A stretch of DNA of 63,877 nt, the filler included, from Octopus bimaculoides (taxonomy: Eukaryota): the NCBI RefSeq assembly GCF_001194135.2. It is 9 parts of 8 records of this genome, joined end to end, with 100 filler letters (N's around TTAATTAATTAA, not from the genome) between each part and the next. Parts side by side here need not be neighbours in the genome. Positions count along the whole stretch, not along the records: positions 34,807 to 45,736 come from NC_068999.1; 8 more parts are not named here. One strand, written 5' to 3'. Shown piece by piece: positions 3,118-45,836 of the stretch. The notes under the pieces were generated by a model. It made no database searches. It was not told the origin of the DNA and was given only the letters and a program-made list of their open reading frames with translations. Position 1 is the stretch's first letter. Every line of letters begins with the position of its first letter. The translations under genes and the position numbers were made by a program.

Positions 3118-4192
3118 CAAATACCTAGATATAAAACACACACAAACGCACATACCCACACATACACGTACACTCATACACACATACATACTCATACGTT
3201 ATACAGAAATGGGTGTATGTGTGTTCGTGTGTGTCTTCGCGTGTGTGTGTGTAAGTTTTATATAACAGAATCGGTTGCTTTTTGTATCCAGAAAAAAAAA
3301 AAATAATAAAGGCAGAGATTGACAGAAAGAAAAGGAAAACAAAAGAAGAAAATAAAACAAAAAAAAACAGTAATCAAAAAACAAACCGCAAACTAATCAA
3401 AAAACACAATGTCCTCAAGAAACACCAGCTGTTTCCAAACGCTGACTTGTGTTCGACCGGAAGTTAGGTTTGTCTGTCTGTTGCTCTACCTGTTTGTCTT
3501 TTCCTGTCTTTAGTCGTTTCTCTGTCACTTCTATTCTTTGTGAATCACACGCACGCACATCCACAGACAAATGTTTATAAATGGATGTATGCTTGCTTGT
3601 ACGTAACTAGAGCTTAGAGATAGCTAGCAAGGTAGACAGACAGACATAGATACATAGATAGACAGATAGACAGACAGACAGACAGATAGATAGAGACATA
3701 CATAAATACGGTGCTCCAGCATGACCACAGCCACTTGGCTGAAACCCATAAATAAATACATAGACAAACATACAAATATATAGATAGATATATATAGATA
3801 GACAAAGGGTCAGACAGATATATAAATAGATATATAGATACACAGATAGATAGACAAATAGATAGGTAAGCGCAAGCGAGGCTTTGTGGTAAGAAGTTTG
3901 CTTCCCAACCATATGGTTGTGAGTTCCATCCCACTGCAAGGTACCTCAGGCAGGTGCCTTCTAGTATTGTCCGGACCGACAGCCAGAAACCGAACAGAAA
4001 CTCACACCGAAGAGNNNNNNNNNNNNNNNNNNNNNNNNNNNNNNNNNNNNNNNNNNNNTTAATTAATTAANNNNNNNNNNNNNNNNNNNNNNNNNNNNNN
4101 NNNNNNNNNNNNNNCCGCAACTGTCCGACGAACGGAAAACGTGTAACTCTGAGTAACAATTTTGTGATGTTTGTGCAGCTTTAATAAAACGT

Positions 4193-14389: not shown

Positions 14390-14974
14390 ACTGACGTCCT
14401 GGACGCGAAATTTTTTTCCCACGAGAATTCCGGACCCCCAGTTATGAACTCATTTGCATACAGCCAATCAGAGCTCAACTATCAAACTGATTCATGAGCA
14501 CATAACAAGTGATGGGCGATAAGCTAAGGTCACTTGGGTAAGGAAAGACCATGCTTCTTTTCTGTTTTAATAATGCTTGTTGTTCTTGTTCTTGTTTCAC
14601 CCATGACTGCCTCTGCGTAGTTATTTGTGTTGTTATTTACTTTTTAAAACGGTAAGGGGAAAGGGTTGCTAGCACATCATCCTCTACCCATATTTTTCCC
14701 ATCCACATCTTTACCATATGTGACCCTAACGAAATCCGATAATAGATATAGATGCAAATCTATTTAATAACTAGTCTCCTTCTAAAATCAGGCATAACTT
14801 GGCGATCGGTCGATATACAAAAACATTCTTCGTCTTGAGTTTACTTGGTAGAGTGCGTTTGTTAACTTGACAACAAGGTCAAGGTGAGCTCTGGTTGGCT
14901 GTATGCAAATTAGTTCATTACTGGAGTTCGGAACTCTCGTGGGAAAAAATTTCGCGTCCAAGACAGGACGCAGT
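14390..14974. mobile_element. MITE with ~85-bp terminal inverted repeats, superfamily unassigned
   Basis: 14390-14477 (…tggacgcgaaatttttttcccacgaga…atttgcatacagccaatcagagctca) is the near reverse complement of 14885-14974. Confidence 0.8.
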
Positions 14975-34706: not shown

Positions 34707-34824
34707 NNNNNNNNNNNNNNNNNNNNNNNNNNNNNNNNNNNNNNNNNNNNTTAATTAATTAANNNNNNNNNNNNNNNNNNNNNNNNNNNNNNNNNNNNNN
34801 NNNNNNATATATATATATATATAT

Positions 34825-34990
34825 AGGCGCAGGAGTGGCTATGTGGTAAATAACTTGCTTACCAACCACGTGGTTCCAGGTTCAGTCCAACTGCATAGCA
34901 CCTTGAGCAAGCGTCTTCTGGTATAGCCTCGGGCCGACCAAAGCCTTGTGAGTGGATTTGCTAGACGGAAACTGAAAGAAGCCTGTCGTA
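34825..34990 (+). mobile_element. SINE family A 5' half, split from its 3' half (45470-45620) by the LTR element
   Basis: aggcgcaggagtggctatgtgg...gaaagaagcctgtcg-(TA)n, then the LTR begins at 34999. Confidence 0.88.
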
Positions 34991-34998
34991 TATATACA

Positions 34999-35955
34999 TG
35001 TAACGGTAAATATAATGGTTCGGAAGTTACCATTTGTAACGGTATGATGTTGAAGATGAAAGAAGAGTGATCAAAGTTGAGGTTGACTCCAATTTTTTAT
35101 TTACTGTTACTTAATATAATGCCATGTTTCGACGGGCAGGTATGTATAATAATATAAGTGGAAAAGCCTGCAAGGTTAAGAAAGTTAATTTCAACCTGAA
35201 TATGTGTGTACACGATCTCATAGTATTTTGTAGAGAGAGATATGNNNNNNNNNNAACGGTAAATATAATGGTTCGGAAGTTACCATTTGTAACGGTATGA
35301 TGTTGAAGATGAAAGAAGAGTGATCAAAGTTGAGGTTGACTCCAATTTTTTATTTACTGTTACTTAATATAATGCCATGTTTCGACGGGCAGGTATGTAT
35401 AATAATATAAGTGGAAAAGCCTGCAAGGTTAAGAAAGTTAATTTCAACCTGAATATGTGTGTACACGATCTCATAGTATTTTGTAGAGAGAGATATGGTA
35501 ATGTTGCAGAGAAAAGAAATTGAGTTAATGAAAGCGAGAGAGTGTGGAACGAGACAACTATGGTGATTAATTCCATAGTTGTCACTTTGTGAAGTTACTT
35601 ATGTTGAGACAGCATTTCGTTTGAGCCGGTCAGCCTCCTCTTTGTCAGTTACTCTCACTAACTTTTCCCTGAAGGCTGCTAGAATTTATAAGAATTTATA
35701 AGAATACAAGACTACAAGAAAGAACCGAAGTAATGGATATTTTGTGGGGTCCATTGTAATTTCAATTCACTTCTCTACTGCAGACAAGAGGTTAGAAGGG
35801 TCAAGTGACAAAACATAAATCGGCTTAGCGAAGCCATCTGGTAAATGTAGCTCCTCTCACAGTTGTTTTCTCCGTGAGAAAAGTGCTGTTGAAATGCTAA
35901 AGGAAATTGGCAGATTCAGGTTCGAATCTACTCTATGCCTAAATGAAGTCACTAC
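34999..35955 (-). mobile_element. 3' LTR of a Ty3/gypsy-like element, including a 243-bp artefactual duplication
   Basis: Starts tgtaac; 35633-35955 is closely similar to 44876-45174; purine-rich gagtgagggagtag (PPT-like) adjoins it on the minus strand at ~35956-35970. Confidence 0.8.
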
Positions 35956-37733
35956 GCTACTCCCTCACTCAAACGAGCGAGAGAGTGTATTCTCAATCCA
36001 TGATATCGTAAAACTTCCTGCAGTGTGTGAAGTGCCTTGAAGGTTTTTCAGAAACAAAATGTGTCTGGCGCTGTTGTCGTGGGTGTTAACAAGAACGACA
36101 GTGCAGTATGCTGGAATGATGCGCGTGACAGGTAATTTTTTCCATCTATTAGGTGACCAAACAGAGGGTCTAACAGTGGGAAATTATGTCTAAACATGAG
36201 CGTAAAGCGTGTGAACTTCCGACGTGCATCGAGTCGGGAAAAGAGCTGAGCGGGCTCAGACATGTTGAAAACAAAGTAGTGAGGCATAATATCATGGTGT
36301 ACGTGTGCGTAACTAGGTGCAAGGTTGAGGCTGTATGCTAGTGTCTGGGGTATTAAATGCCTTGAAATGTGCAGGAGTGAAAGTGAGGCATGTGTCGCGT
36401 TGTAGAGGACGAACAACATTTTCTATGTATACGTGACCGACCTAGGATCTTACAGAGGCGAGGTGTGTCTACAAGGGCGCAGGGAGCATGAAAAACAAGT
36501 GAGAAAGGCATGGTGTGGTGCATGAATGACAGTGTCAACATGTATGTGTGTATGAACATTGTGTGGTGCAGCAAAAGAAACGAACAGTATAGGAATGAGT
36601 AAACAAAAGTGATAAGACTTAGCTGAAGATAGTGTCCTTTCTGAAAAGTGTATTACTGAAAAGTGAGAAAAGATGTGCATGCATAGAAAAAGAGGTTATT
36701 GAAAGTCTATGTAAGAGTCTTAAATACATACAAAAGTTCATAGACAATGTGGGGACGAGACGAAAAACGTGTGTGTGCGCCGAAAAGGTTGCATTGTAGG
36801 GAAGTGCATCGCAGTTTGCATCGTGGTATAATGCTTTCTGCAGCAAGTCGAACGCGAGTTGTGGAGTGCATTTGTGGCACTTGAGAGGTAGTCAGGTAGA
36901 AGTTAAATGCGGAATCTGATTGACGGCGGACGGCACGTAGATAGACTCAGAATGGACATTAAGTTGATAAGGGGGAATACTGGAGCTGACGAATGCTATT
37001 TTAGATGAAGTGTTGGTATTCCATCTAATGACTCTGCTCAGAAGGCTGTACTCTTATTTGGTAGTAAACCCGGTATGAAAAAATGCATGGAACAAAGGTG
37101 ATGACTTTAAATACGTTTATTGTGGCCACACGTATGTATACACAAGCTGAATGACAGTGGTTGGTGGACATTTATTCATATATTTACATGCATCTGCGTG
37201 GGTTGTGTGTTAGCTGTTAACCCTGGTGAGGATATGTTAGAACCAGTGCAGTGTGTTAGAACCAGTGCAGTGTGTTAGTGCTGTGTAGATGTGGTTGACG
37301 ACGTTGGTGAGAGACCTCATGGTGGTGACGAAGATGGAGGTCGCTGTAATGCGGTCAGTGGTTAGACCTTAGAAAATCTGGAAACAACAAAATTTCTTTA
37401 TTTACCTATAAAGGCATATATAGAGGGGACACTAAAAAAGACGAACACTTACATTCTTACAAATGGTTTGGGTTACAATGAAATGGAAAAAATCGGATAA
37501 AGGGATGAAATAAAATTATATACAAATAAAAATTTATAAAATGATGTTCCGGGTTATTTGTTATGGTTAACCCGCCGTTTTTTTTTTCTCCTTTGGTAAG
37601 TTTCGCAATCCAATAGAGACTTGTTCAACTTCCAATAGCCAGATCCCTGTCTATGAACCATACCTATATGCAGCCTACATGTCACTAATTTGTAATCCGT
37701 GTAGGGTACATAGATAAACTGTGGACAGCTTAA

Positions 37734-38417
37734 CCCATTACCTCCCATAATTCTATTAACTGGAATTTTTTTTATGAAACTTTGATTTCTAGCATAAAAT
37801 AGCCTTAGAAACATGCTGGAATGATCAAAATAACATTTCGAAACAACATTTCAAAAAGAAATAAGCGAGATATTGGGTGAAAAATTAGCAAACCTCATTT
37901 GAATATCAGAGAAATGTTGTTGGCACTCCGTCGCTTACGACGTCGAGGGTTCCAGTCGATCCGATCAACGGAACAGCCTGCTCGTGAAATTAACGTGCAA
38001 GTGGCTGAGCACTCCACAGACACGTGTACCCTTAACGTAGTTCTCGGGGATATTCAGCGTGACACAGTATGACAAGGCTGACCCTTTGAATTACAGGCAC
38101 AACAGAAACAGGAAGAAAGAGTGAGAGAAAGTTGTGGTGAAAGAGTACAGCAGGGTTCGCCACCATCCCCTGCCGGTGCCTCGTGGGGCTTTAGGTGTTT
38201 TCGCTCAATAAACACTCACAACGCCCGGTCTGGGAATCGAAACCGCGATCCTATGATCGCGAGTCCGCTGCCCTAACCACTAGGCCATTGCGCCTCCATC
38301 AGAGAAATATACCTAGTAGATATAGCAAAAAGATTAGATATGTGTAAATATTGACAGATAATTACGAAATTTGTAATTTTTAAGTGATCCCATATGAGAT
38401 CACTGGTAGGTAATGGG
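37734..38417. mobile_element. piggyBac-type MITE (~290 bp without its nested SINE)
   Basis: TTAA TSD at 37730-37733 and 38418-38421; TIRs CCCATTACCT / AGGTAATGGG; CCC...GGG ends with TTAA are characteristic of piggyBac. Confidence 0.9.
37916..38297 (-). mobile_element. SINE family C, full length, nested in the piggyBac MITE
   Basis: Perfect 11-bp TSD atcagagaaat at 37905-37915 and 38298-38308; near-identical to 4597-4970. Confidence 0.95.
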
Positions 38418-40443
38418 TTAAACTAAACTTATCTCTAGCATTAACTATTATCCTGTCTATATAAGACCTGATAGACTCGTCGTTATTAGACCAAGTCCAC
38501 ATTGGAACGCTCGGATTATCAAGTCTATCGATCTGCCAGCCTAGAATCACTTCAGCAGATCGATGAGGCGTGAGTTACACTTCCTAACATTCGGGCCTAC
38601 GCTATCTAGGCGTACATCCAGAATAGCGTTAAAATCCTCTAGCAAAACTAGTGTTCTTGATGTCACAAGAAAGTTCTCTAGGCATTGATAGAACTCATCC
38701 CGTTTGCCTAGCGTGCTAGGCGCGTAGATGCCAACGAACCTGAAGGCTTTACTCTGTATGTCAGATCCAGAACGACCGACTTGCATTATGGGTCCACGAA
38801 AATCGTACGTGTCTGCAGGGCCAGGCTTTTCGGGACCTAAACTACAACACCTCTACTCCCCGCCTTCTGGCTAGGAGACATGATTTTCTCATAGCCATTC
38901 AGTAGAGTTGAGAAGGCCTGCAGCTTGTACAGCCTGGTCTCTGTAGCAACCATAATATCAATTATGTGTGACCTGAGGTCGTCGAGGAGGCAAGCCTGCT
39001 TCCTCTTCGAACTCAGGCCATGGACATTTAAACACGCAATGCATAGCGTAGCCATGTCAAACACAAAAAAGAAGGAAATTCGAGCTTATCTGCTCGTTTG
39101 TCTTTCGAGGTGGGGTTATTCTCAGTATTTCTGAGACAAGTTCCCCTCCCTCCTTTCTTTCACAAAAATGGTTCTACCGGCGGGTTAAATACCTTAGGCA
39201 GTTCTTTCAGTTCCGCTATTTTTGGGGGGTGTCTACTTTTGAGTTTGTTGTAACGGCCTCCTTGGCCGGAAGTGCCGCCTCTTTACATTTCCCCTTGGGT
39301 TCGTCTTTACTAGCAGAGGTGGTCGCCTGCTGTGTCACAGTCTCCGTGGCTGGGGGAACCGTCTCTTCGTTTTTCTCTTGCTCCTTCTCCTCCTCCGCCT
39401 CGGCTTCCTTGTCCTTTGTTTTTTGTTTTTGTTTACCTCAGGTGCCCTTTTTTCCACAATGAAAGAACCTGGGTCTTCTCCCCTCCACATGGCCTGCCAA
39501 TTTTGACTCCTCTGCGTGTATAGTTTCGGGTAGACCTTCCAAACCCAGACTTGTCGCTAGTGCCAGGATTTCCAGAGTTTGACCCCGCCAATTCTGTGGG
39601 GCGTCTCTGGAGATCTGAATAATATTTATCTTGTCCTCTCTCTTGTAGAGGTGTGTGGCAACGATCCATGCTACCTCCACCTCTGGCGGGGATGTTCTTA
39701 ATCCTTATCCGGGACGTTCTGCGTCCCACATATAGATGCAGTAGCATGACGTTGTCACATAGCAAGGTTCGAGTTGAGAATTCTCTTGTCTTCTCAATCG
39801 ATTCGAACCTTGCTTCGACGGTCGCGTACCTTGTGTCTCGGGCATCTTTCAACTGTGCTTTCCTCAACTGTGCTTTCCCGAGACATCTTTCAACTGTACT
39901 TTCCTCCAAATATTCCAGCCTTTTCTTTTCCACATCATGTTTTATTTATAATTGTCTTTTCCTTTGTCTTGTTTCTTATTTCACTCGGGGGTGTTATCTT
40001 ACTTTCCCCGTTTTCCTCGGTGATCATAACATAGTATGCCTATATATCTTCCATCTTCAAAGTAATTGTTTCAAGTCCACTAACAGCGGCGGGAAAATTC
40101 ATTGTTTTCTTTTTTTTTTTTGTTCTTCTACAGAAGACATTGTTTTTAATATTTATTAAAAACATATTCAAAAATTCCACAATTTTTGTCCCGAAAAGGA
40201 ACGCGATTCAAAATTAGCCGCAAGCGGTAAACACAAATTATATATCCTTCCCCATTGGGGGAGATAACAGTTCACAATATTACCGCAGACAATTATTTAA
40301 CAACGTTTCCCTTACGAGAAACCATCAAGCACAATGTAATAATTCCTGCAAGGAGGCAACAATTATAACATCTAACCTTCGAGGTAAACACAAGCAGATA
40401 TATCACATAAGAATGTGAGCGAACGACGGTCTGGAAACAACAG

Positions 40444-42471
40444 ATTTCTTTATTTACCTATAAAGGTATACATAGAGGGGACGCTACAAGAGACGAACGC
40501 TTACATTCTTATAAATGGTTTGGGTTGCAATGAAATGAAAACAATCGAAAAAATTGGATAAAAGGATGAGATAAAATTATATATAATTAAGAAATTATAA
40601 AATAATGTTCCGGGTTATTTTTTATGATTAACCCGCCAGTTTTTTCTTCTCCTTTGTTTTTTTTTCTTTTTTTTTCCTTCTTTTCGCCTTCACCGGCTAT
40701 GTTAGCTCGGCCCCATTCATCCTTACTATATTCATTCTTCATTCTTCCTTACTACAGACATTCATCTTTTTCCGGACGTACTTTGCGACAGGAACCTTTT
40801 TTCCAGACAGATCTTTCTCAACAGGTGGAAGTTGAAATAACTTACCAACCTATGTCCGGAGATCAAGTGACCTGTCCCAATCCCTTTCGCTCGTGTCGTC
40901 CATACCGTTTCTTTCAGTATGGCTACTAAGCAGAAAAAAGATGCCTTCTTTTTCTTGTTGAAGGAAGAAGGCGGTACGATCTTAATCATGGGCTCAGTCG
41001 AGAGCCGTACTCTCTCTGCATCCGACATCAGTTGTTTGACATAGGTTATCAACTCCTCACAGTGTACGAAGGCGTGCGCGACAGTTTCGCTGATGCGCCC
41101 GCACCTCGGGCATGTGGGGGAGGTGTTAAAGCCGGTCTAGACAACCTCTCTCGAACCGGTAAGGCCGATAGGTAGCACAACCAAGCCAAGTATTTCTGGA
41201 AGTTATCCAGATACCTCGGCCCGAATGACTTTCCGAATAGGCTGGTCAGTTGCTCCTTATCGAAGCCCAGTATTTCTGAGACAAGTTCCCCTCTCTCCTT
41301 TCTTTCATACAAAAATGGTTCTACCTTAAGCAGTTCTTTCAGTTCTGCTATCTCTTTTGGGTGTCTGTTTTTGAGTTCGTTGTATAGTTTTCGGGAGATT
41401 TTTCCCAATGTTACTGGGCTCATCTCATTGTCATTGACATATAGGGACGTTTTGTGATGAGGTCCAATGACCCCATCCAGGTATTTATTACTGTTTTTGT
41501 ATGCGATTGTCTTTCAGAAATATCGATTGGGGTCATCTTTACTAGTAGAGGCGGTTGCTCGATGTGTAACGGCCTCCTTGGCCGGAAGTGCCGCTTCTTT
41601 ACTTTTCCCCTTGGGTTCGTCTTTACTAGTAGAAGCGGTCACCCGCTGTGTCACAGTCTCCGTGGCTGAGGTGGGGGGGGGACCGTCTCTTCATTTTTCT
41701 CTTTCTCCTCTGCTTCCTTGTCCTTTTTTGTGGGGCATTTTGACCTCAGGTGCCCTTTTTTCCACATTGAAAGCTCCTGGGTTTTCTCCTCTCCACATGG
41801 TCTGCCAATATTGACTCCTCTACGTGTATCGTTTCGGGGAAAACCTTCCAAATCCAGACTCGTCGCGTGTGCCAGGCTTTCCAGAGTTTGACCACACCAA
41901 TTCTGTGGGGCGTCTCTGGAGATTCGAATATTTATTTTGTCCTCTCTCTTGTAGAGAAGTGTGGAAACGATCCGTGCTACCTCCACCTCTGGCGGGGATG
42001 TTCTTAATCCTTATCCGGGACGTTCTGCGTCCCAGATATAGAGGCAATAGCATGACGTTGTCACATAGCAAGGTTCCAGTTGAGAATTCTCTTATCTTCC
42101 ATCCTCAAAGTAACTGTTTCAAGTCCACCAACAGCGGCGGCAAAATTCATTGTTTTCTTTTTTTGTTCTTCTACAGAAGACATTGTTTTTGATATCTTTT
42201 TTAAATATTCAAAAATTCCACAATTTTTATTCCGGAATGGAACGCGGTTCAAAATCAACCGCAAACGGTCAACACAATTTATATATCCTTCCTCCTTGGG
42301 GGAGGATAACAGTTCACAATATTAATGCAGACAATTATTTAACAATGTTTCCCTCACGGGAAACCAACAAACACAATGTAATAATTCTTGCAAGCAGGCA
42401 ACAATTATAACATCTAACCTTCGTGGTAAACACAAGCAAATATATCACGTAAGAATGTGAGCGAACGATGG
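40444..42471 (-). mobile_element. L1/Tx1-like LINE derivative B: ORF1 fused to the ORF2 C-terminal zinc finger; EN and RT deleted
   Basis: 5' UTR, ORF1 and 3' UTR closely similar to element A; after ...GELVSEIL (junction ~41268) it continues LAWLCYLSALPVRERLSR...CPRCGRISETVAHAFVHC (zf-RVT-like CCHC). Confidence 0.88.
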
Positions 42472-42486
42472 TCTGAAACCAGCAGT

Positions 42487-44295
42487 ATTTCTTTATTTAA
42501 GCACTCAGGCTCTGACACAGAGGGGACAGCATAAGGACAGACAGGACACAACGGTGGGGACAAAGAATATAAAAACGAATGAAAATGAAAAAAATGTATA
42601 ATGAAATCGATGATAATGAAATGGTTGCATTGAATCCCACTCCTCAAGCAGTACCATTTTACTGTTAATTTATACAAGTTATGGAAGTTTTCTTTTTCTT
42701 TTTACATCTTTTTCCGTTTTTTTAAAGTCTATTTCCACTTTTTTGCCTTTTCTTTTTCTCCTTTGTTAATAAGTCTATTTCTTTTTTCCTTCTTTTAAAG
42801 TACTCCTTTATTATCATTCATTAGAGGTATTAACTCCTCGTTTGTAACTACTTTTGGTAGTTCTTCAAATTCAATTTCCTCCCCCAAAGGGTTCAGTTCA
42901 TCTACAAATAGTTCTTTCAACTGTTTATACCTTTCATTGTCAATCACCACTCCCTTTATGTGTTGCGGGTAACGTTCAGCTAGTAATTTAATCCTTATGG
43001 CACCTTTGAATTTCGTTATTTTCCGCTCTATGGCGGTATTTTCATGTATGTTACTATATGCCACTTTTTCTTATTAGTATTTACATGTTTACGCTCCAGA
43101 CCTTGACTGTCCGAGCTATTCGTTTTCCTTGGTTCCTCCGTCTGTACACACCCATAATCGTCCATGATTATATCTTCCACTCTATATTGCAATACTTCTG
43201 CTGGTATATCTGACCAGTTCCTCAGTACCTCCTCCATTTTTTCCTCTACTTCCTTCTTTCGTTTTTGGTTCTCTGTCGGAGAGCTCACCCGCTTTTTTAA
43301 CATTAAACGTCTCCTCTTTATTTTCGACCCCTCTTCTTCGGCGGGCTGCTCTTCGCGTTGTTGTTCTTCTACTTCACTTTCTTGCTGAGGGCACTTTGCT
43401 TTCATATGTCCTTTTTGTTTACATAGAAAACATGTTGGAGGTCTTCCATCCACCACCACTCTTAGCGTAATGTGTTCTGGTAGAAGAATCTCTTCTACAA
43501 TTCCATGTAAGTTTTTTAACCCAACTTGAATTACTATTTCTAGGCCCCAACAATTAATTTCCTTCGTTCTGGTTATCTTCAGAATCCTTGCTTTTTCCTC
43601 CATTCCGTGCATGACTACTGCCGCCAGCCATGCCTCTTCGATTTCGGGGGGCACTCTGGCAACACGTTTGCCACAGTACATCGGCAGCAGCACCCACTCT
43701 TGTGTCCTTATTGGTTCAGTGGAGTGGTTAATAGCGTTCTCCTCACTGGTGAACCTAACCTCCACTGTGTCGTATTTTTTTCCACGTGTATAGTAGGTGG
43801 TTATCCTCTCACTTCACCTAAACATTTCTCTATTGCTTCTAGTGGAGCAATCTCTATTTTCTTGGTAGCGGTTGATAACGTCCTGTACACAACCGTCTTC
43901 CTTGCTACATTCTTCGTCACTTCTTCTGCTGGGGTCAGCTTTAAACCGGCCCTTTCCTTTTGTAAAATTTGTTTCCTTTTTTCCATTCCTTTGTCTCTAT
44001 TTTTATCTCGCGAACTTCAAGGGTGTTGGTCGTAATATCTTGTGTGGTTGCGGATGCATAACTTGCGACACGTTCCATTTCTCCTCTTTTCACCCATAAT
44101 GGGGAAGAAATAGTTTTCACAAACAGGCAGAACGCAGCAACAAAAATTCAACAATTCAACAATTTAAACAATTCAACGAATCTTGGTTCTCCTGCACGGG
44201 GAGACCTACAACAAACATATAATAACAGTGTGTAACAATAACTGTGTGTAACAATTCGAACTCACATCAAAGAAACTACTACCAACACCCTTCCG
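42487..44295 (-). mobile_element. ORF1-only L1/Tx1-like element C (HAL1-like)
   Basis: ORF1 from ~44078 (MERVASYASAT) to 42795 with about 3 frameshifts; intact CCHC knuckle CFLCKQKGHMKAKC; homologous to ORF1 of A and B (EKCL..DTVEVRF..PPEIEEAW); no ORF2; ends aataaagaaat. Confidence 0.85.
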
Positions 44296-44332
44296 TCTGG
44301 AACCAACAGACCTTGAGACTAGAAAGAGGTGA

Positions 44333-44341
44333 GCTTTTATA
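44333..44341 (-). promoter_or_regulatory. TATA box candidate (tataaaagc)
   Basis: Consensus TATAAAA, 32 nt upstream of the junction motif; an 11-bp inverted repeat atattggcgca/tgcgccaatat lies ~50-90 nt further upstream. Confidence 0.4.
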
Positions 44342-44773
44342 GCTGACGGTAGGCTCAATGATATATTTGGAGGCTGTGATTGACTGGGTTGCATATTGGC
44401 GCACAATAGGGTAAGAGACAAATTGCGCCAATATCAATCAATCAGAGTGGTAGACACAACGATGTCCAAAACAGCGCCCAGAGGTTAGCTGTTACCTGCT
44501 ACGTTCGTAAGTATTTGAATATAATGGAGAGTGGAAGTTCACTAGAATTCGCTATACTGTCATTCTTTTCGTCTGGTATGACGACTGTTGAAACGAAGCA
44601 ATGGCTGTTGAAAAGAAGGCAATATTTCTTTAGCTCGGGCCACCAAATGTATGTGATGAACGTATGTGACGACATAATAGAACATGCAGTATCAGAATGG
44701 CAGTATTTCTTTTCAGCATCAGAGTCAGTAAAATGCAGCGACACGTAGCATCAGAAGACAGCGATTCTTTTTA

Positions 44774-44788: not shown

Positions 44789-45174
44789 TGTAACGATTGC
44801 TGTTATGGTAATTGTAACGATATAACTATTCGTTATGGTCGAGGGTCACCAATTGTAACGGTATGTTAAGTGGAGTCAGTTGCTCTCACAAACTAACTTT
44901 TCCCTGAAGGCTGCTAAAATTTATAAGAATGTAAGAAACAACCAAAACAATGGATATTTTGTGGGGTCCATTGTAATTTCAATTCACTTCTCTACTGCAG
45001 ACAAGAGGTTAGGAGGATCAAGTGAAAAAGACATAAATCGGCTTAGAGAAGCCATTTGGTAAATGTAGCTGCTGTCACTGTTGTCTTCTCTGTGAGAAAA
45101 GTGCTGTTGAAATGTTAAAGGAAATTGGCAGATTCAGGTTCGAATCTACTCTATGCCCAAATGAAGTCACTACA
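44789..45174 (-). mobile_element. 5' LTR, internally shorter than the 3' LTR
   Basis: tgtaac...gaagtcactaca; matches 35633-35955. Confidence 0.8.
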
Positions 45175-45196
45175 TATATGTATGTATGTATGTATG

Positions 45197-45235
<39 letters not shown>

Positions 45236-45237
<2 letters not shown>

Positions 45238-45430
45238 GAGAATTTACGTAAAAATAACAGACGAAGACAGGTGGTGTAAACGACAAATGGATGTATTAGT
45301 ATAACACTCGGCAATAAAGAAAGTCTTTAACGTTTCGAGCCTACGCTCTTCAACAGAAAGAAACACAGAAAGAAACAGGGAGAGAAAAAAGTATATAAGT
45401 GTAGTGGTAAGCGATCTATCATGAGGAATA
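45236..45430. mobile_element. Penelope-type terminal repeat fragment
   Basis: Carries the minimal hammerhead motif at 45324-45361 and is inserted in the TA tract; family assignment inferred from the hammerhead. Confidence 0.55.
45324..45361 (-). ncRNA. Minimal type-I hammerhead ribozyme motif (A6>U variant)
   Basis: tcttt CTGTTGA a gagc-gtag-gctc GAAA cg T T aaaga: stem I tcttt/aaaga, stem II gagc/gctc, palindromic stem III aacgtt. Confidence 0.6.
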
Positions 45431-45469
45431 TTATATGTGTGTGTGTGTGTGTGTGTGTGTATTGTATGT

Positions 45470-45620
45470 ATACGTTTGTGTGTCGGTGATTCTCACCCTA
45501 GTATCACTTGACAACTGATGCTGGTGTGTTTACGTCCCCGAAACTTAGCGGTTCGGCAAAGAAGACCGATAGAATAAGTATTAGGCTTACAAAGAATAAA
45601 TCCTGGGGTCGATTTGCTCG
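45470..45620 (+). mobile_element. SINE family A 3' half
   Basis: cacttgacaactgatgctggtgtgtttacgtcccc...gaccgatagaataagta...ggggtcgatttgctcgact. Confidence 0.85.
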
Positions 45621-45836
45621 ACTACTAAGACGGAGCAAGTGTCTTCTACTATAGCCTCGGGCCGACCAAAGCCTTGTGAGTGGATTTGGTAGACGGAAAC
45701 TGAACGAAGCCCGTCGTATATATATATATATATATANNNNNNNNNNNNNNNNNNNNNNNNNNNNNNNNNNNNNNNNNNNNTTAATTAATTAANNNNNNNN
45801 NNNNNNNNNNNNNNNNNNNNNNNNNNNNNNNNNNNN

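What the first reader, a model, noticed from the sequence alone, without database searches (positions are those of the whole stretch)
37377..44309. Head-to-tail array of three Tx1-like LINEs with one 14-bp motif at all four junctions: probable undescribed target-specific family
The minus-strand junction words are ctgttggttccaga (44309-44296), ctgctggtttcaga (42485-42472), ctgttgtttccaga (40443-40430) and ttgttgtttccaga (37390-37377). Each LINE ends aataaagaaat within 1 nt of the next motif. This TSD-C-TSD-B-TSD-A-TSD pattern is what repeated sequence-specific insertion into a regenerated target would give. Two distinct subfamilies (C versus A/B) use the same site. Tx1-clade elements are known to be target-specific (Tx1L into Tx1D, Keno into U2 snRNA, Mutsu into 5S rDNA, Dewa into tRNA arrays, Kibi/Koshi into microsatellites), but I do not recognise this motif as any of those targets. 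An alternative is that the motif is a conserved 5' end of each element.
Basis: partly seen in the sequence, partly recalled or inferred. Interest (0 to 1): 0.85.

Follow-up and report, generated by a model that had tools for sequence, protein, structure and literature searches.

The report
Octopus LINE array sharing one junction word
Three broken copies of L1/Tx1-type jumping genes from two unrelated families sit head to tail in octopus DNA, each bounded by the same 14-base word, which is best explained by repeated insertion into one regenerated site, a behaviour already known for Tx1-type elements.

Summary
YTGYTGKTTYCAGA occurs exactly four times, at the four junctions of a head-to-tail array of three internally deleted LINE copies (0 of 100 shuffles give four). 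The elements are L1/Tx1-type, with an ORF1 zinc knuckle, an APE endonuclease and a zf-RVT domain. None keeps a reverse transcriptase. C is an ORF1-only element with 33% ORF1 identity to A/B. It shares with them only the 3' end TAAATAAAGAAAT and the junction word.

The word is most likely a 14-15 bp target-site duplication regenerated by successive insertions. It flanks both outer ends. Variable extra bases sit exactly at the 3' boundary. The downstream flank is not a LINE. Relatives make 14-18 bp duplications.

One Octopus bimaculoides locus has a C-like element behind CAGTTGGTTTCAGA and a homologous upstream flank. All four other octopus loci sampled also show head-to-tail LINE arrangements (one read through an assembly gap). 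One carries a different 15-nt junction word and one junction has none.

So site-directed reinsertion is supported. A single genome-wide target motif is not shown, because no genome-wide copy set could be retrieved. The pattern matches the published "tandem insertions sandwiching a TSD" of Tx1-mobilised elements: a new member of a known kind.

The parts
44296..44309 (-). J1: junction word CTGTTGGTTCCAGA, left outer boundary (upstream flank | element C)
42487..44295 (-). Element C, an ORF1-only LINE derivative. 5'UTR 44295-44079. ORF1 about 44078-42798 with three frameshifts and a CX2CX4HX4C zinc knuckle (CFLCKQKGHMKAKC). 3'UTR ends in TAAATAAAGAAAT. There is no ORF2.
   Evidence: Frame map. Pfam zf-CCHC E 0.0013, below the curated cut-off. 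The same ORF1-then-3'UTR architecture is seen in O. bimaculoides L016. 201 ORF1 relatives were found, and the eight named of the ten looked up are octopus proteins.
42472..42485 (-). J2: junction word CTGCTGGTTTCAGA (C|B), preceded by one extra base (a, 42486)
40444..42471 (-). Element B, A/B family. 5'UTR 42471-42184. ORF1 starts at 42183 and carries a deletion of about 250 bp relative to A. A large deletion joins the ORF1 end to the ORF2 C-terminus (zf-RVT, 41136-40765). 3'UTR ends in TAAATAAAGAAAT.
   Evidence: zf-RVT E 1.9e-9. B vs A is 78-89% identical.
40430..40443 (-). J3: junction word CTGTTGTTTCCAGA (B|A), with no extra base
37391..40429 (-). Element A, A/B family. It has a 5'UTR, ORF1 and the ORF2 APE endonuclease (starts at 39055). 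The endonuclease is interrupted by a foreign insertion. A deletion joins the endonuclease end to the 3'UTR, which ends in TAAATAAAGAAAT.
   Evidence: Exo_endo_phos E 3.5e-5. 45% amino-acid identity to the endonuclease of an intact O. vulgaris ORF2.
37730..38421 (-). Foreign insertion inside A's endonuclease. It is a piggyBac-like MITE (TTAA|CCCATTACC...GGTAATGGG|TTAA) that carries a tRNA-like SINE head at 38297-38277. It is not part of the LINE.
37377..37390 (-). J4: junction word TTGTTGTTTCCAGA, right outer boundary (A | downstream flank), preceded by one extra t
44310..44560 (-). Upstream half of the presumed target. It is homologous to the sequence in front of a C-like element in O. bimaculoides (core 44544-44364, 74% identical). 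In the window it carries TATAAAAG 32 nt before the word and CCAAT/ATTGG boxes. These are not conserved in the other species.
35956..37376 (-). Downstream half of the presumed target. It is non-coding, has no LINE protein similarity, and has no homolog in the four octopus loci fetched.
   Evidence: no Rfam match

Best explanation
The array is the product of at least two, and probably three, separate target-primed reverse transcription events at one and the same staggered-cut site.

The ORF2 protein of an A/B-type autonomous element nicks the bottom strand just left of CTGTTGKTTCCAGA. It primes cDNA synthesis precisely at the element's non-polyadenylated 3' end ...TAAATAAAGAAAT. The top strand is cut 14-15 nt to the right, so each insertion leaves the word on both sides and the site is regenerated for the next insertion.

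C is an ORF1-only element that carries the same 13-nt 3' end. It is presumably mobilised in trans by the same ORF2 protein, which would explain why an unrelated family uses the same site.

Shown here: the anatomy, the independence of C from A/B, and the TSD-sized word at both outer ends.

Inferred: the nick positions, the trans-mobilisation, and that site choice is sequence-directed. The direction could come from endonuclease recognition, from pairing of the RNA 3' end with the nicked target, or from both.
For: - Four words sit exactly at the junctions, and 0 of 100 shuffles reproduce this.
- The word flanks both outer ends. The downstream flank is not a LINE and the upstream flank does not end in a LINE 3' end.
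- Variable single extra bases (a, none, t) lie exactly between ...gaaat and the word, as expected of a real 3' junction.
- C and A/B share no nucleotide similarity and only 33% ORF1 identity, so tandem duplication cannot explain the array.
- The substitution pattern fits nested duplication. J1 and J2, which flank C, share G at position 7. J3 and J4, which flank A, share T.
- Solo full-length relatives in another genome have TSDs of 15, 18 and 14 bp, and 3' ends of a hairpin plus GAAATAAA without poly(A).
- In O. bimaculoides L015 a C-like element sits behind CAGTTGGTTTCAGA, at the same distance from ORF1. The upstream flank is 74% identical over 181 nt, E 6e-27. Each copy has only 1-3 frame disruptions although the two copies differ by about 35%.
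- The O. sinensis array L018 mixes at least 3 subfamilies and carries one 15-nt word at three successive junctions, in front of two different 5'UTR types.
- Published precedent: tandem insertions of Tx1-mobilised SINEU-3 sandwich a 16-bp TSD and are attributed to sequential insertion (PMC4494074).
Against: - Only one locus of these exact families is available, and no genome-wide flank logo could be made.
- L015 could be the orthologous locus rather than an independent target copy. Flank and element body differ by similar amounts overall, 66% vs 64.5% identity.
- Related arrays carry other words or none. L018 uses CTGAATACTCGTCAT. The L018 junction at 4184 and the L016 junction have no clear word. 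The three solo relatives in the distant genome have unrelated targets. So strict specificity for one motif is not a property of the clade.
- The sandwiched length varies from 0 to 46 nt among related arrays, unlike the constant TSDs of classic site-specific LINEs.
Confidence: 0.6

Rival explanations
1. Local homing rather than a genome-wide target. New copies integrate preferentially at the ends of resident copies of the same LINE group, whatever the original target was. Arrays then grow in place, and the sandwiched word is simply the TSD of the founding insertion copied again and again.
For: - All four other octopus loci reached through ORF1 homologs, with no selection for arrays, also hold head-to-tail LINE arrangements. 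L016, L017 and L018 are clear; L015 is read through a 2.1-kb assembly gap.
- Junction words differ between arrays.
- A distant relative forms a 31.5-kb contig of tandem full-length units, while its solo copies have unrelated TSDs.
- The 13-nt 3' end is the only sequence conserved across all these families.
Against: - J1 has no LINE upstream of it and J4 has none downstream, so at least one of the later insertions used a word that lacked one of the LINE contexts.
- The O. bimaculoides locus has the same word in a homologous non-LINE flank, which fits a shared target, or reuse of an orthologous site.
Confidence: 0.25
2. The word is part of the transcribed element rather than a pure TSD. It would be either a 5' leader acquired by transcription from the upstream flank, or a 3' read-through tail. 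The AATAAA signal sits 5 nt from the element end, so RNA cleavage would fall about 19 nt downstream, at the CA of ..CCAGA. Under this reading the remaining fourth copy is the genomic target.
For: - TATAAAAG starts 32 nt before the first base of J1.
- AATAAA sits at the extreme 3' end in every family.
- A and B carry near-identical words on their 3' side (J4, J3), while C's (J2) differs at three positions.
- Tx1 families with target-derived 5' heads are known (PMC4494074).
Against: - Variable extra bases sit exactly at the gaaat|word boundary.
- The TATA box is not conserved in L015.
- Solo relatives show no carried tail between GAAATAAA and their TSD.
- This reading still needs a target that carries the same word, so it is a variant of site-directed insertion rather than an alternative to it.
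Confidence: 0.2
3. One-step concatemer. During a single insertion the reverse transcriptase jumped from the 5' end of one RNA to the 3' end of another, giving C-B-A at once.
For: - End-to-end template jumping is established for non-LTR reverse transcriptases (general knowledge of R2 and L1 enzymes).
- Some related junctions have no sandwiched word.
Against: - It does not explain the same 14-nt word at both internal junctions and at both outer ends.
- A carries later insertions (a MITE and a SINE), and each element has its own internal deletions.
Confidence: 0.05
4. Tandem duplication or unequal crossing-over of one element plus its TSD, or an assembly artefact.
For: - A and B are 78-89% identical.
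- The O. vulgaris array L017 has 99%-identical units, which could have been amplified in that way.
- The piece contains a scaffold gap flanked by a perfect 243-bp duplication at 35002-35497.
Against: - C is unrelated to A/B at the nucleotide level.
- A and B have different deletions.
- The three units are too different to be collapsed or duplicated by an assembler.
- The gap artefact lies 1.9 kb outside the array.
Confidence: 0.04

Closest known systems
Tx1-clade target-preferring LINEs and their dependants (Tx1L in Tx1D; Keno in U2; Tx1-Mar and SINEU-3 in Mariner-N4_AMi; PMC4494074)
   Same: - An APE-type ORF2 with a C-terminal zinc finger.
- A defined 3' end without poly(A).
- A TSD of about 14-16 bp.
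- Non-autonomous partners that share the site.
- Tandem insertions that sandwich a TSD, attributed to sequential insertion.
   Different: - The target here matches no RNA gene (Rfam) and is not a recognised transposon.
- Specificity is documented at one locus plus one locus in another species.
- Related octopus arrays use other junction words.
- Clade membership could not be tested by RT phylogeny.
R1 elements of insect 28S rDNA (14-bp TSD, tandem R1 arrays); comparison from general knowledge
   Same: An APE-type site-specific LINE with a 14-bp duplication, able to form head-to-tail arrays separated by target sequence.
   Different: R1 belongs to a different clade and targets a conserved multicopy gene. 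Here the flanks are non-coding and poorly conserved.
HAL1 (half-L1) ORF1-only non-autonomous elements of mammals; comparison from general knowledge
   Same: Element C, and its O. bimaculoides relatives L015 and L016, keep a 5'UTR, ORF1 and a 3'UTR but no ORF2.
   Different: C belongs to a Tx1/L1-type octopus lineage. It shares only the terminal 13 nt with its presumed autonomous partner. Its copy number is unknown.
Human L1 ORF2p (PDB 8SXT, 9K6G and others)
   Same: It is the best solved-structure match of the relatives' ORF2 (E 3e-71). The domain order is the same: endonuclease, RT, then a cysteine-rich C-terminus.
   Different: The octopus elements have no poly(A) tail, a hairpin plus AATAAA 3' end, an ORF1 with a CCHC knuckle, and they form arrays.

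Membership tests
L1/Tx1 group of non-LTR retrotransposons | N-terminal APE-type endonuclease in ORF2 | tested here: met
   Element A: Exo_endo_phos E 3.5e-5, 24.1 bits, just under the 24.5 cut-off. It is 45% identical over 262 aa to the endonuclease of an intact octopus ORF2 that scores 57.7 bits.
L1/Tx1 group of non-LTR retrotransposons | C-terminal cysteine-rich zinc-binding domain after the RT | tested here: met
   Element B: zf-RVT E 1.9e-9, 38.5 bits, above the cut-off. The motif CPRCG...H....C is visible in the sequence.
L1/Tx1 group of non-LTR retrotransposons | Reverse transcriptase domain | tested here: not met
   No RT remains in A, B or C; all three are deleted. RT is present in the full-length relatives L017 (RVT_1 8e-31) and P0001.
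Tx1 clade specifically | RT domain groups with Tx1 rather than L1 in an RT phylogeny (RTclass1-type test) | not testable with these tools
   The window has no RT, and no named Tx1 reference sequences were available. Indirect evidence only: octopus repeat annotations list L1-Tx1 families (PMC13282606), and mollusc L1-like LINEs are placed in Tx1 (PMC10294476).
Tx1 clade specifically | ORF1 with a CCHC zinc knuckle | tested here: inconclusive
   zf-CCHC scores 19.2 bits against a cut-off of 20.8 for C, and 15.3 bits for A. The CX2CX4HX4C pattern is readable in C. The feature is not unique to Tx1.
Target-specific LINE (functional class) | Independent copies across the genome are flanked by the same target sequence | tested here: inconclusive
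   This locus, plus one O. bimaculoides locus with a 12/14 word and a homologous flank. That locus may be orthologous. No other copies could be retrieved.
Target-specific LINE (functional class) | Precise, invariant 3' junction | tested here: met
   All three elements end in TAAATAAAGAAAT, 0-1 nt before the word.
Target-specific LINE (functional class) | Constant TSD length and sequence within the family | tested here: inconclusive
   The TSD is 14-15 nt at all junctions here. Related arrays show 0, 8-11, 15 and 46 nt.
Target-specific LINE (functional class) | The endonuclease cleaves the target sequence specifically | not testable with these tools
   This needs a biochemical assay.
ORF1-only non-autonomous LINE derivative (HAL1-like), for element C | The same ORF1-plus-UTRs architecture recurs in independent copies | tested here: met
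   Window C, and L016 element 1, which runs from the ORF1 end through a 3'UTR of about 340 nt to AATAAAGAAAA with no ORF2. L015 is consistent up to an assembly gap.

The most novel reading that the evidence does not exclude
Site choice may be guided by the RNA rather than fixed in the endonuclease. The poly(A) signal sits at the very end of the element, so transcripts would run about 15-20 nt into the 3' TSD. That tail would then pair with the nicked target, so each lineage would inherit and re-use whatever word flanked its source copy. This would give array-specific junction words (CTGTTGKTTCCAGA here, CTGAATACTCGTCAT in O. sinensis) and make head-to-tail arrays the default state for this LINE group.
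Probability: 0.12. Interest if true: 0.8.

Novelty: new member of a known kind. Interest (0 to 1): 0.45.

Why it matters
If the site preference holds genome-wide, octopus genomes carry an uncharacterised lineage of site-directed L1/Tx1-type LINEs together with an ORF1-only parasite of them. Their target is neither an RNA gene nor a microsatellite. An apparently intact copy exists in O. vulgaris (ORF1 503 aa, ORF2 1132 aa) and could be tested. Site-directed LINEs are of interest both for how endonuclease or RNA pairing selects targets and as templates for targeted insertion tools. The observation that every sampled locus of this group holds head-to-tail elements also matters for repeat annotation and for assembly of cephalopod genomes. 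If the preference does not hold, this is one unusual locus of an otherwise ordinary, already annotated LINE type.

Tried and rejected
- A protein search with the ORF2 C-terminus of B found nothing.
- A composite query of endonuclease plus ORF1 found only one distant relative. Low-complexity words may have filled the candidate cap.
- An exact look-up of C's ORF1 found nothing on record.
- A metagenome scan for the A/B 3' end returned six chance hits with unrelated context.
- The Rfam E-value scan of the piece found no RNA gene in the flanks, only microsatellite-type miRNA artefacts. ARAGORN found no tRNA. So the target is not an snRNA, 5S or tRNA gene.
- My first reading of the L001/L002 junction at a T-run was wrong. 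The T-run lies inside a 3'UTR of about 700 nt.
- I considered the flanking direct repeats (45173-44892 and 35955-35657) as LTRs or as a 2.3-kb tandem unit. This was left unresolved. The same repeat occurs next to another LINE 5' end in L015.
- I considered the TATA/CCAAT arrangement upstream of J1 as the promoter of a target gene. It is not conserved in L015, so it gets little weight.
- My by-eye reading of a degenerate word at the L016 tandem junction was not upheld by the alignment.
- The suggested homology of the L017 left boundary to the target is too short to rely on.
Full report
**Observation**

On the minus strand the piece reads as follows:
- upstream flank
- J1 (44309-44296)
- element C (44295-42487)
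- J2 (42485-42472)
- element B (42471-40444)
- J3 (40443-40430)
- element A (40429-37391)
- J4 (37390-37377)
- downstream flank

The degenerate word YTGYTGKTTYCAGA, allowing one mismatch, matches nowhere else in the window. The chance expectation is 0.09 matches, and 0 of 100 shuffles give four. Each element ends in TAAATAAAGAAAT. One extra a precedes J2, nothing precedes J3, and one extra t precedes J4.

**Anatomy**

Three-frame translation and Pfam give the following.

Element C:
- A 5'UTR.
- An ORF1 of about 425 codons with three frameshifts and a CX2CX4HX4C knuckle.
- A 3'UTR of about 310 nt.
- No ORF2.

Element B:
- A 5'UTR.
- An ORF1 lacking about 250 bp relative to A.
- A deletion that joins the ORF1 end to the ORF2 C-terminus (zf-RVT, E 1.9e-9).
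- A 3'UTR.

Element A:
- A 5'UTR and ORF1.
- The APE endonuclease of ORF2 (Exo_endo_phos, E 3.5e-5).
- A deletion from the endonuclease end into the 3'UTR.
- Its endonuclease is split by a piggyBac-like MITE (TTAA plus CCCATTACC inverted ends, 38421-37730) that carries a tRNA-like SINE.

No copy has a reverse transcriptase.

A and B are 78-89% identical. C has no nucleotide similarity to either, and its ORF1 is 33% identical to A's. The only strings shared by C and A/B are the 13-nt 3' end and the junction word.

**Organism and relatives**

The protein collections hold no copies of A, B or C, and a metagenome scan gave chance hits only.

A full HMMER search with C's ORF1 found 201 relatives. 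Ten were looked up, and the eight that carry a name are uncharacterised CCHC proteins of Octopus bimaculoides, O. sinensis and O. vulgaris. The window is therefore octopod DNA.

Four chromosome loci were fetched through these proteins: L015 and L016 (O. bimaculoides), L017 (O. vulgaris) and L018 (O. sinensis).

A more distant clade (P0001 to P0077, 32-38% endonuclease identity) comes from ENA assemblies of an unidentified eukaryote. Its ORF2 is closest to human L1 ORF2p among solved structures.

**What the relatives show**

1. TSD size and 3' end. Three solo full-length copies in the distant clade have TSDs of 15, 18 and 14 bp with unrelated sequences. They end in a hairpin followed by GAAATAAA, with no poly(A). 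A 14-bp word is therefore the expected TSD size for this kind of element.

2. Arrays are common.
   - The distant clade includes a 31.5-kb contig of tandem full-length units.
   - L016 holds two C-like ORF1-only elements in tandem.
   - L017 holds at least three full-length units 99% identical, with a period of 5273 bp. One has an intact ORF2 of 1132 aa with endonuclease, RT and zf-RVT.
   - L018 holds at least five units of at least three subfamilies.
   - L015 has a C-like element followed, after an assembly gap, by A/B-like pieces.

3. Junction words.
   - In L018 the 15-nt word CTGAATACTCGTCAT sits at three successive junctions, in front of two different 5'UTR types (0 of 100 shuffles). 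This is the same architecture as in the window, with a different word.
   - Other junctions carry 8-11 nt (L017), 46 nt, or nothing (L018 at 4184). L016 is ambiguous.

4. The same site in another species.
   - In L015 the C-like element is preceded by CAGTTGGTTTCAGA at the same distance from ORF1 as in the window.
   - The sequence upstream is homologous to the window's upstream flank: 74% over 181 nt, E 6e-27, and alignable over about 265 nt up to and including the word.
   - Element bodies are 64.5% identical and flanks 66% overall.
   - Each copy has only one to three frame disruptions. They are therefore not old orthologous relics decaying in place. They are either independent insertions into homologous targets or renewals at one conserved site.

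**Interpretation**

The word is best read as a target-site duplication regenerated by successive insertions:
- It bounds both outer ends.
- The downstream flank has no LINE similarity.
- Variable extra bases lie exactly at the 3' boundary.
- J1 and J2, which flank C, share G at position 7, while J3 and J4, which flank A, share T. This is what nested duplications would give, with B the oldest element.

Two unrelated families at one 14-bp site exclude chance and tandem duplication. The shared 13-nt 3' end, together with C's lack of ORF2, suggests that C is mobilised in trans by an A/B-type ORF2 protein. That would explain the shared site.

What directs the reinsertion is not settled. The possibilities are:
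- endonuclease recognition of the word (classic Tx1 behaviour);
- homing to resident copies;
- pairing of a 3' read-through RNA tail with the target. The AATAAA signal lies 5 nt from the element end, so RNA cleavage would fall near the end of the word.

The different words in related arrays, and the unrelated TSDs of distant solo copies, argue against one clade-wide motif.

**Comparison with what is known**

Kojima (PMC4494074) reports the following:
- Many Tx1 families prefer specific targets, including DNA transposons, LTR elements, satellites and microsatellites.
- Dependent SINEs share those targets.
- Tandem SINEU-3 insertions sandwich a 16-bp TSD and arise by sequential insertion.

That is the same pattern as seen here.

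L1-Tx1 families are annotated in octopus genomes (PMC13282606; PMC8967140), but I found no description of their target behaviour. Tx1 membership itself could not be tested because no RT survives in the window.

**Verdict**

This is a new member of a known kind, with moderate interest. The most novel reading still open is RNA-tail-guided, lineage-inherited site choice.

Noticed in passing
window 37730-38421 (minus strand): A piggyBac-like MITE (TTAA duplication, inverted ends CCCATTACC.../...GGTAATGGG) is inserted in the endonuclease of element A. It carries a tRNA-like SINE head itself (38297-38277).
   Followed up: partly
window 35002-35244 and 35255-35497: A perfect 243-bp duplication sits on either side of a 10-N gap. 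This is most likely a scaffolding artefact. It lies 1.9 kb outside the array.
   Followed up: no
window 44892-45173 and 35657-35955; L015 14011-14168: A dispersed repeat of about 300 bp lies in direct orientation on both sides of the array (90-95% identical). A 68% relative lies just upstream of an A/B-like 5'UTR in O. bimaculoides. Its relation to the target sequence is unclear.
   Followed up: partly
window 44310-44440: TATAAAAG starts 32 nt before the first base of J1, and there are CCAAT/ATTGG boxes at -90 and -123 within an inverted repeat. The arrangement looks like a promoter, but the TATA and one CCAAT box are not conserved in the homologous O. bimaculoides flank.
   Followed up: partly
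window 44319-44309 and 37372-37363: The reconstructed empty site would carry a near-direct repeat, TCTCAAGGTCT ... TCTAAGGTCT. One copy ends at the first bases of the word and the other starts 4 nt after it. Its significance is unknown.
   Followed up: no
window 44856-44843, 44791-44778, 44650-44637: Three direct copies of ACAATTGGTGACCC (the third with 2 mismatches) lie in the upstream flank. Similar ..TGGTGACCC repeats occur upstream of the L015 element. They are reminiscent of the subterminal repeats of a DNA transposon.
   Followed up: partly
L017 4445-19184 (O. vulgaris OX597840.1): A tandem array of at least 3 full-length LINE units, 99% identical, with a period of 5273 bp. The first unit has an ORF1 of 503 aa and an uninterrupted ORF2 of 1132 aa (endonuclease, RT, zf-RVT) and may be active.
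   Followed up: partly
L018 whole locus (O. sinensis CM016867.1): An array of at least 5 LINE units from at least 3 subfamilies (77-92% identical). The word CTGAATACTCGTCAT sits at junctions 9363, 14631 and 19901. A similar 30-nt sequence also occurs inside the 5'UTR of one unit (14692-14722).
   Followed up: partly
L009/L010 (ENA ERZ21867824 ctg88761c); L012/L013: In an unidentified eukaryote, a 31.5-kb contig with a 'c' name suffix (perhaps assembler-flagged circular) consists of tandem full-length LINEs with a period of about 6820 bp. A solo copy of the same clade sits inside a tandem repeat of about 440 bp, and that locus is duplicated at 97% identity on a second contig.
   Followed up: partly
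window 45456-45736 and 34807-35002: SINE copies 80-96% identical to copies in O. bimaculoides and O. vulgaris lie at both ends of the piece, each next to (TA)n microsatellites. The Rfam miRNA hits at 45164-45245 are microsatellite artefacts.
   Followed up: no
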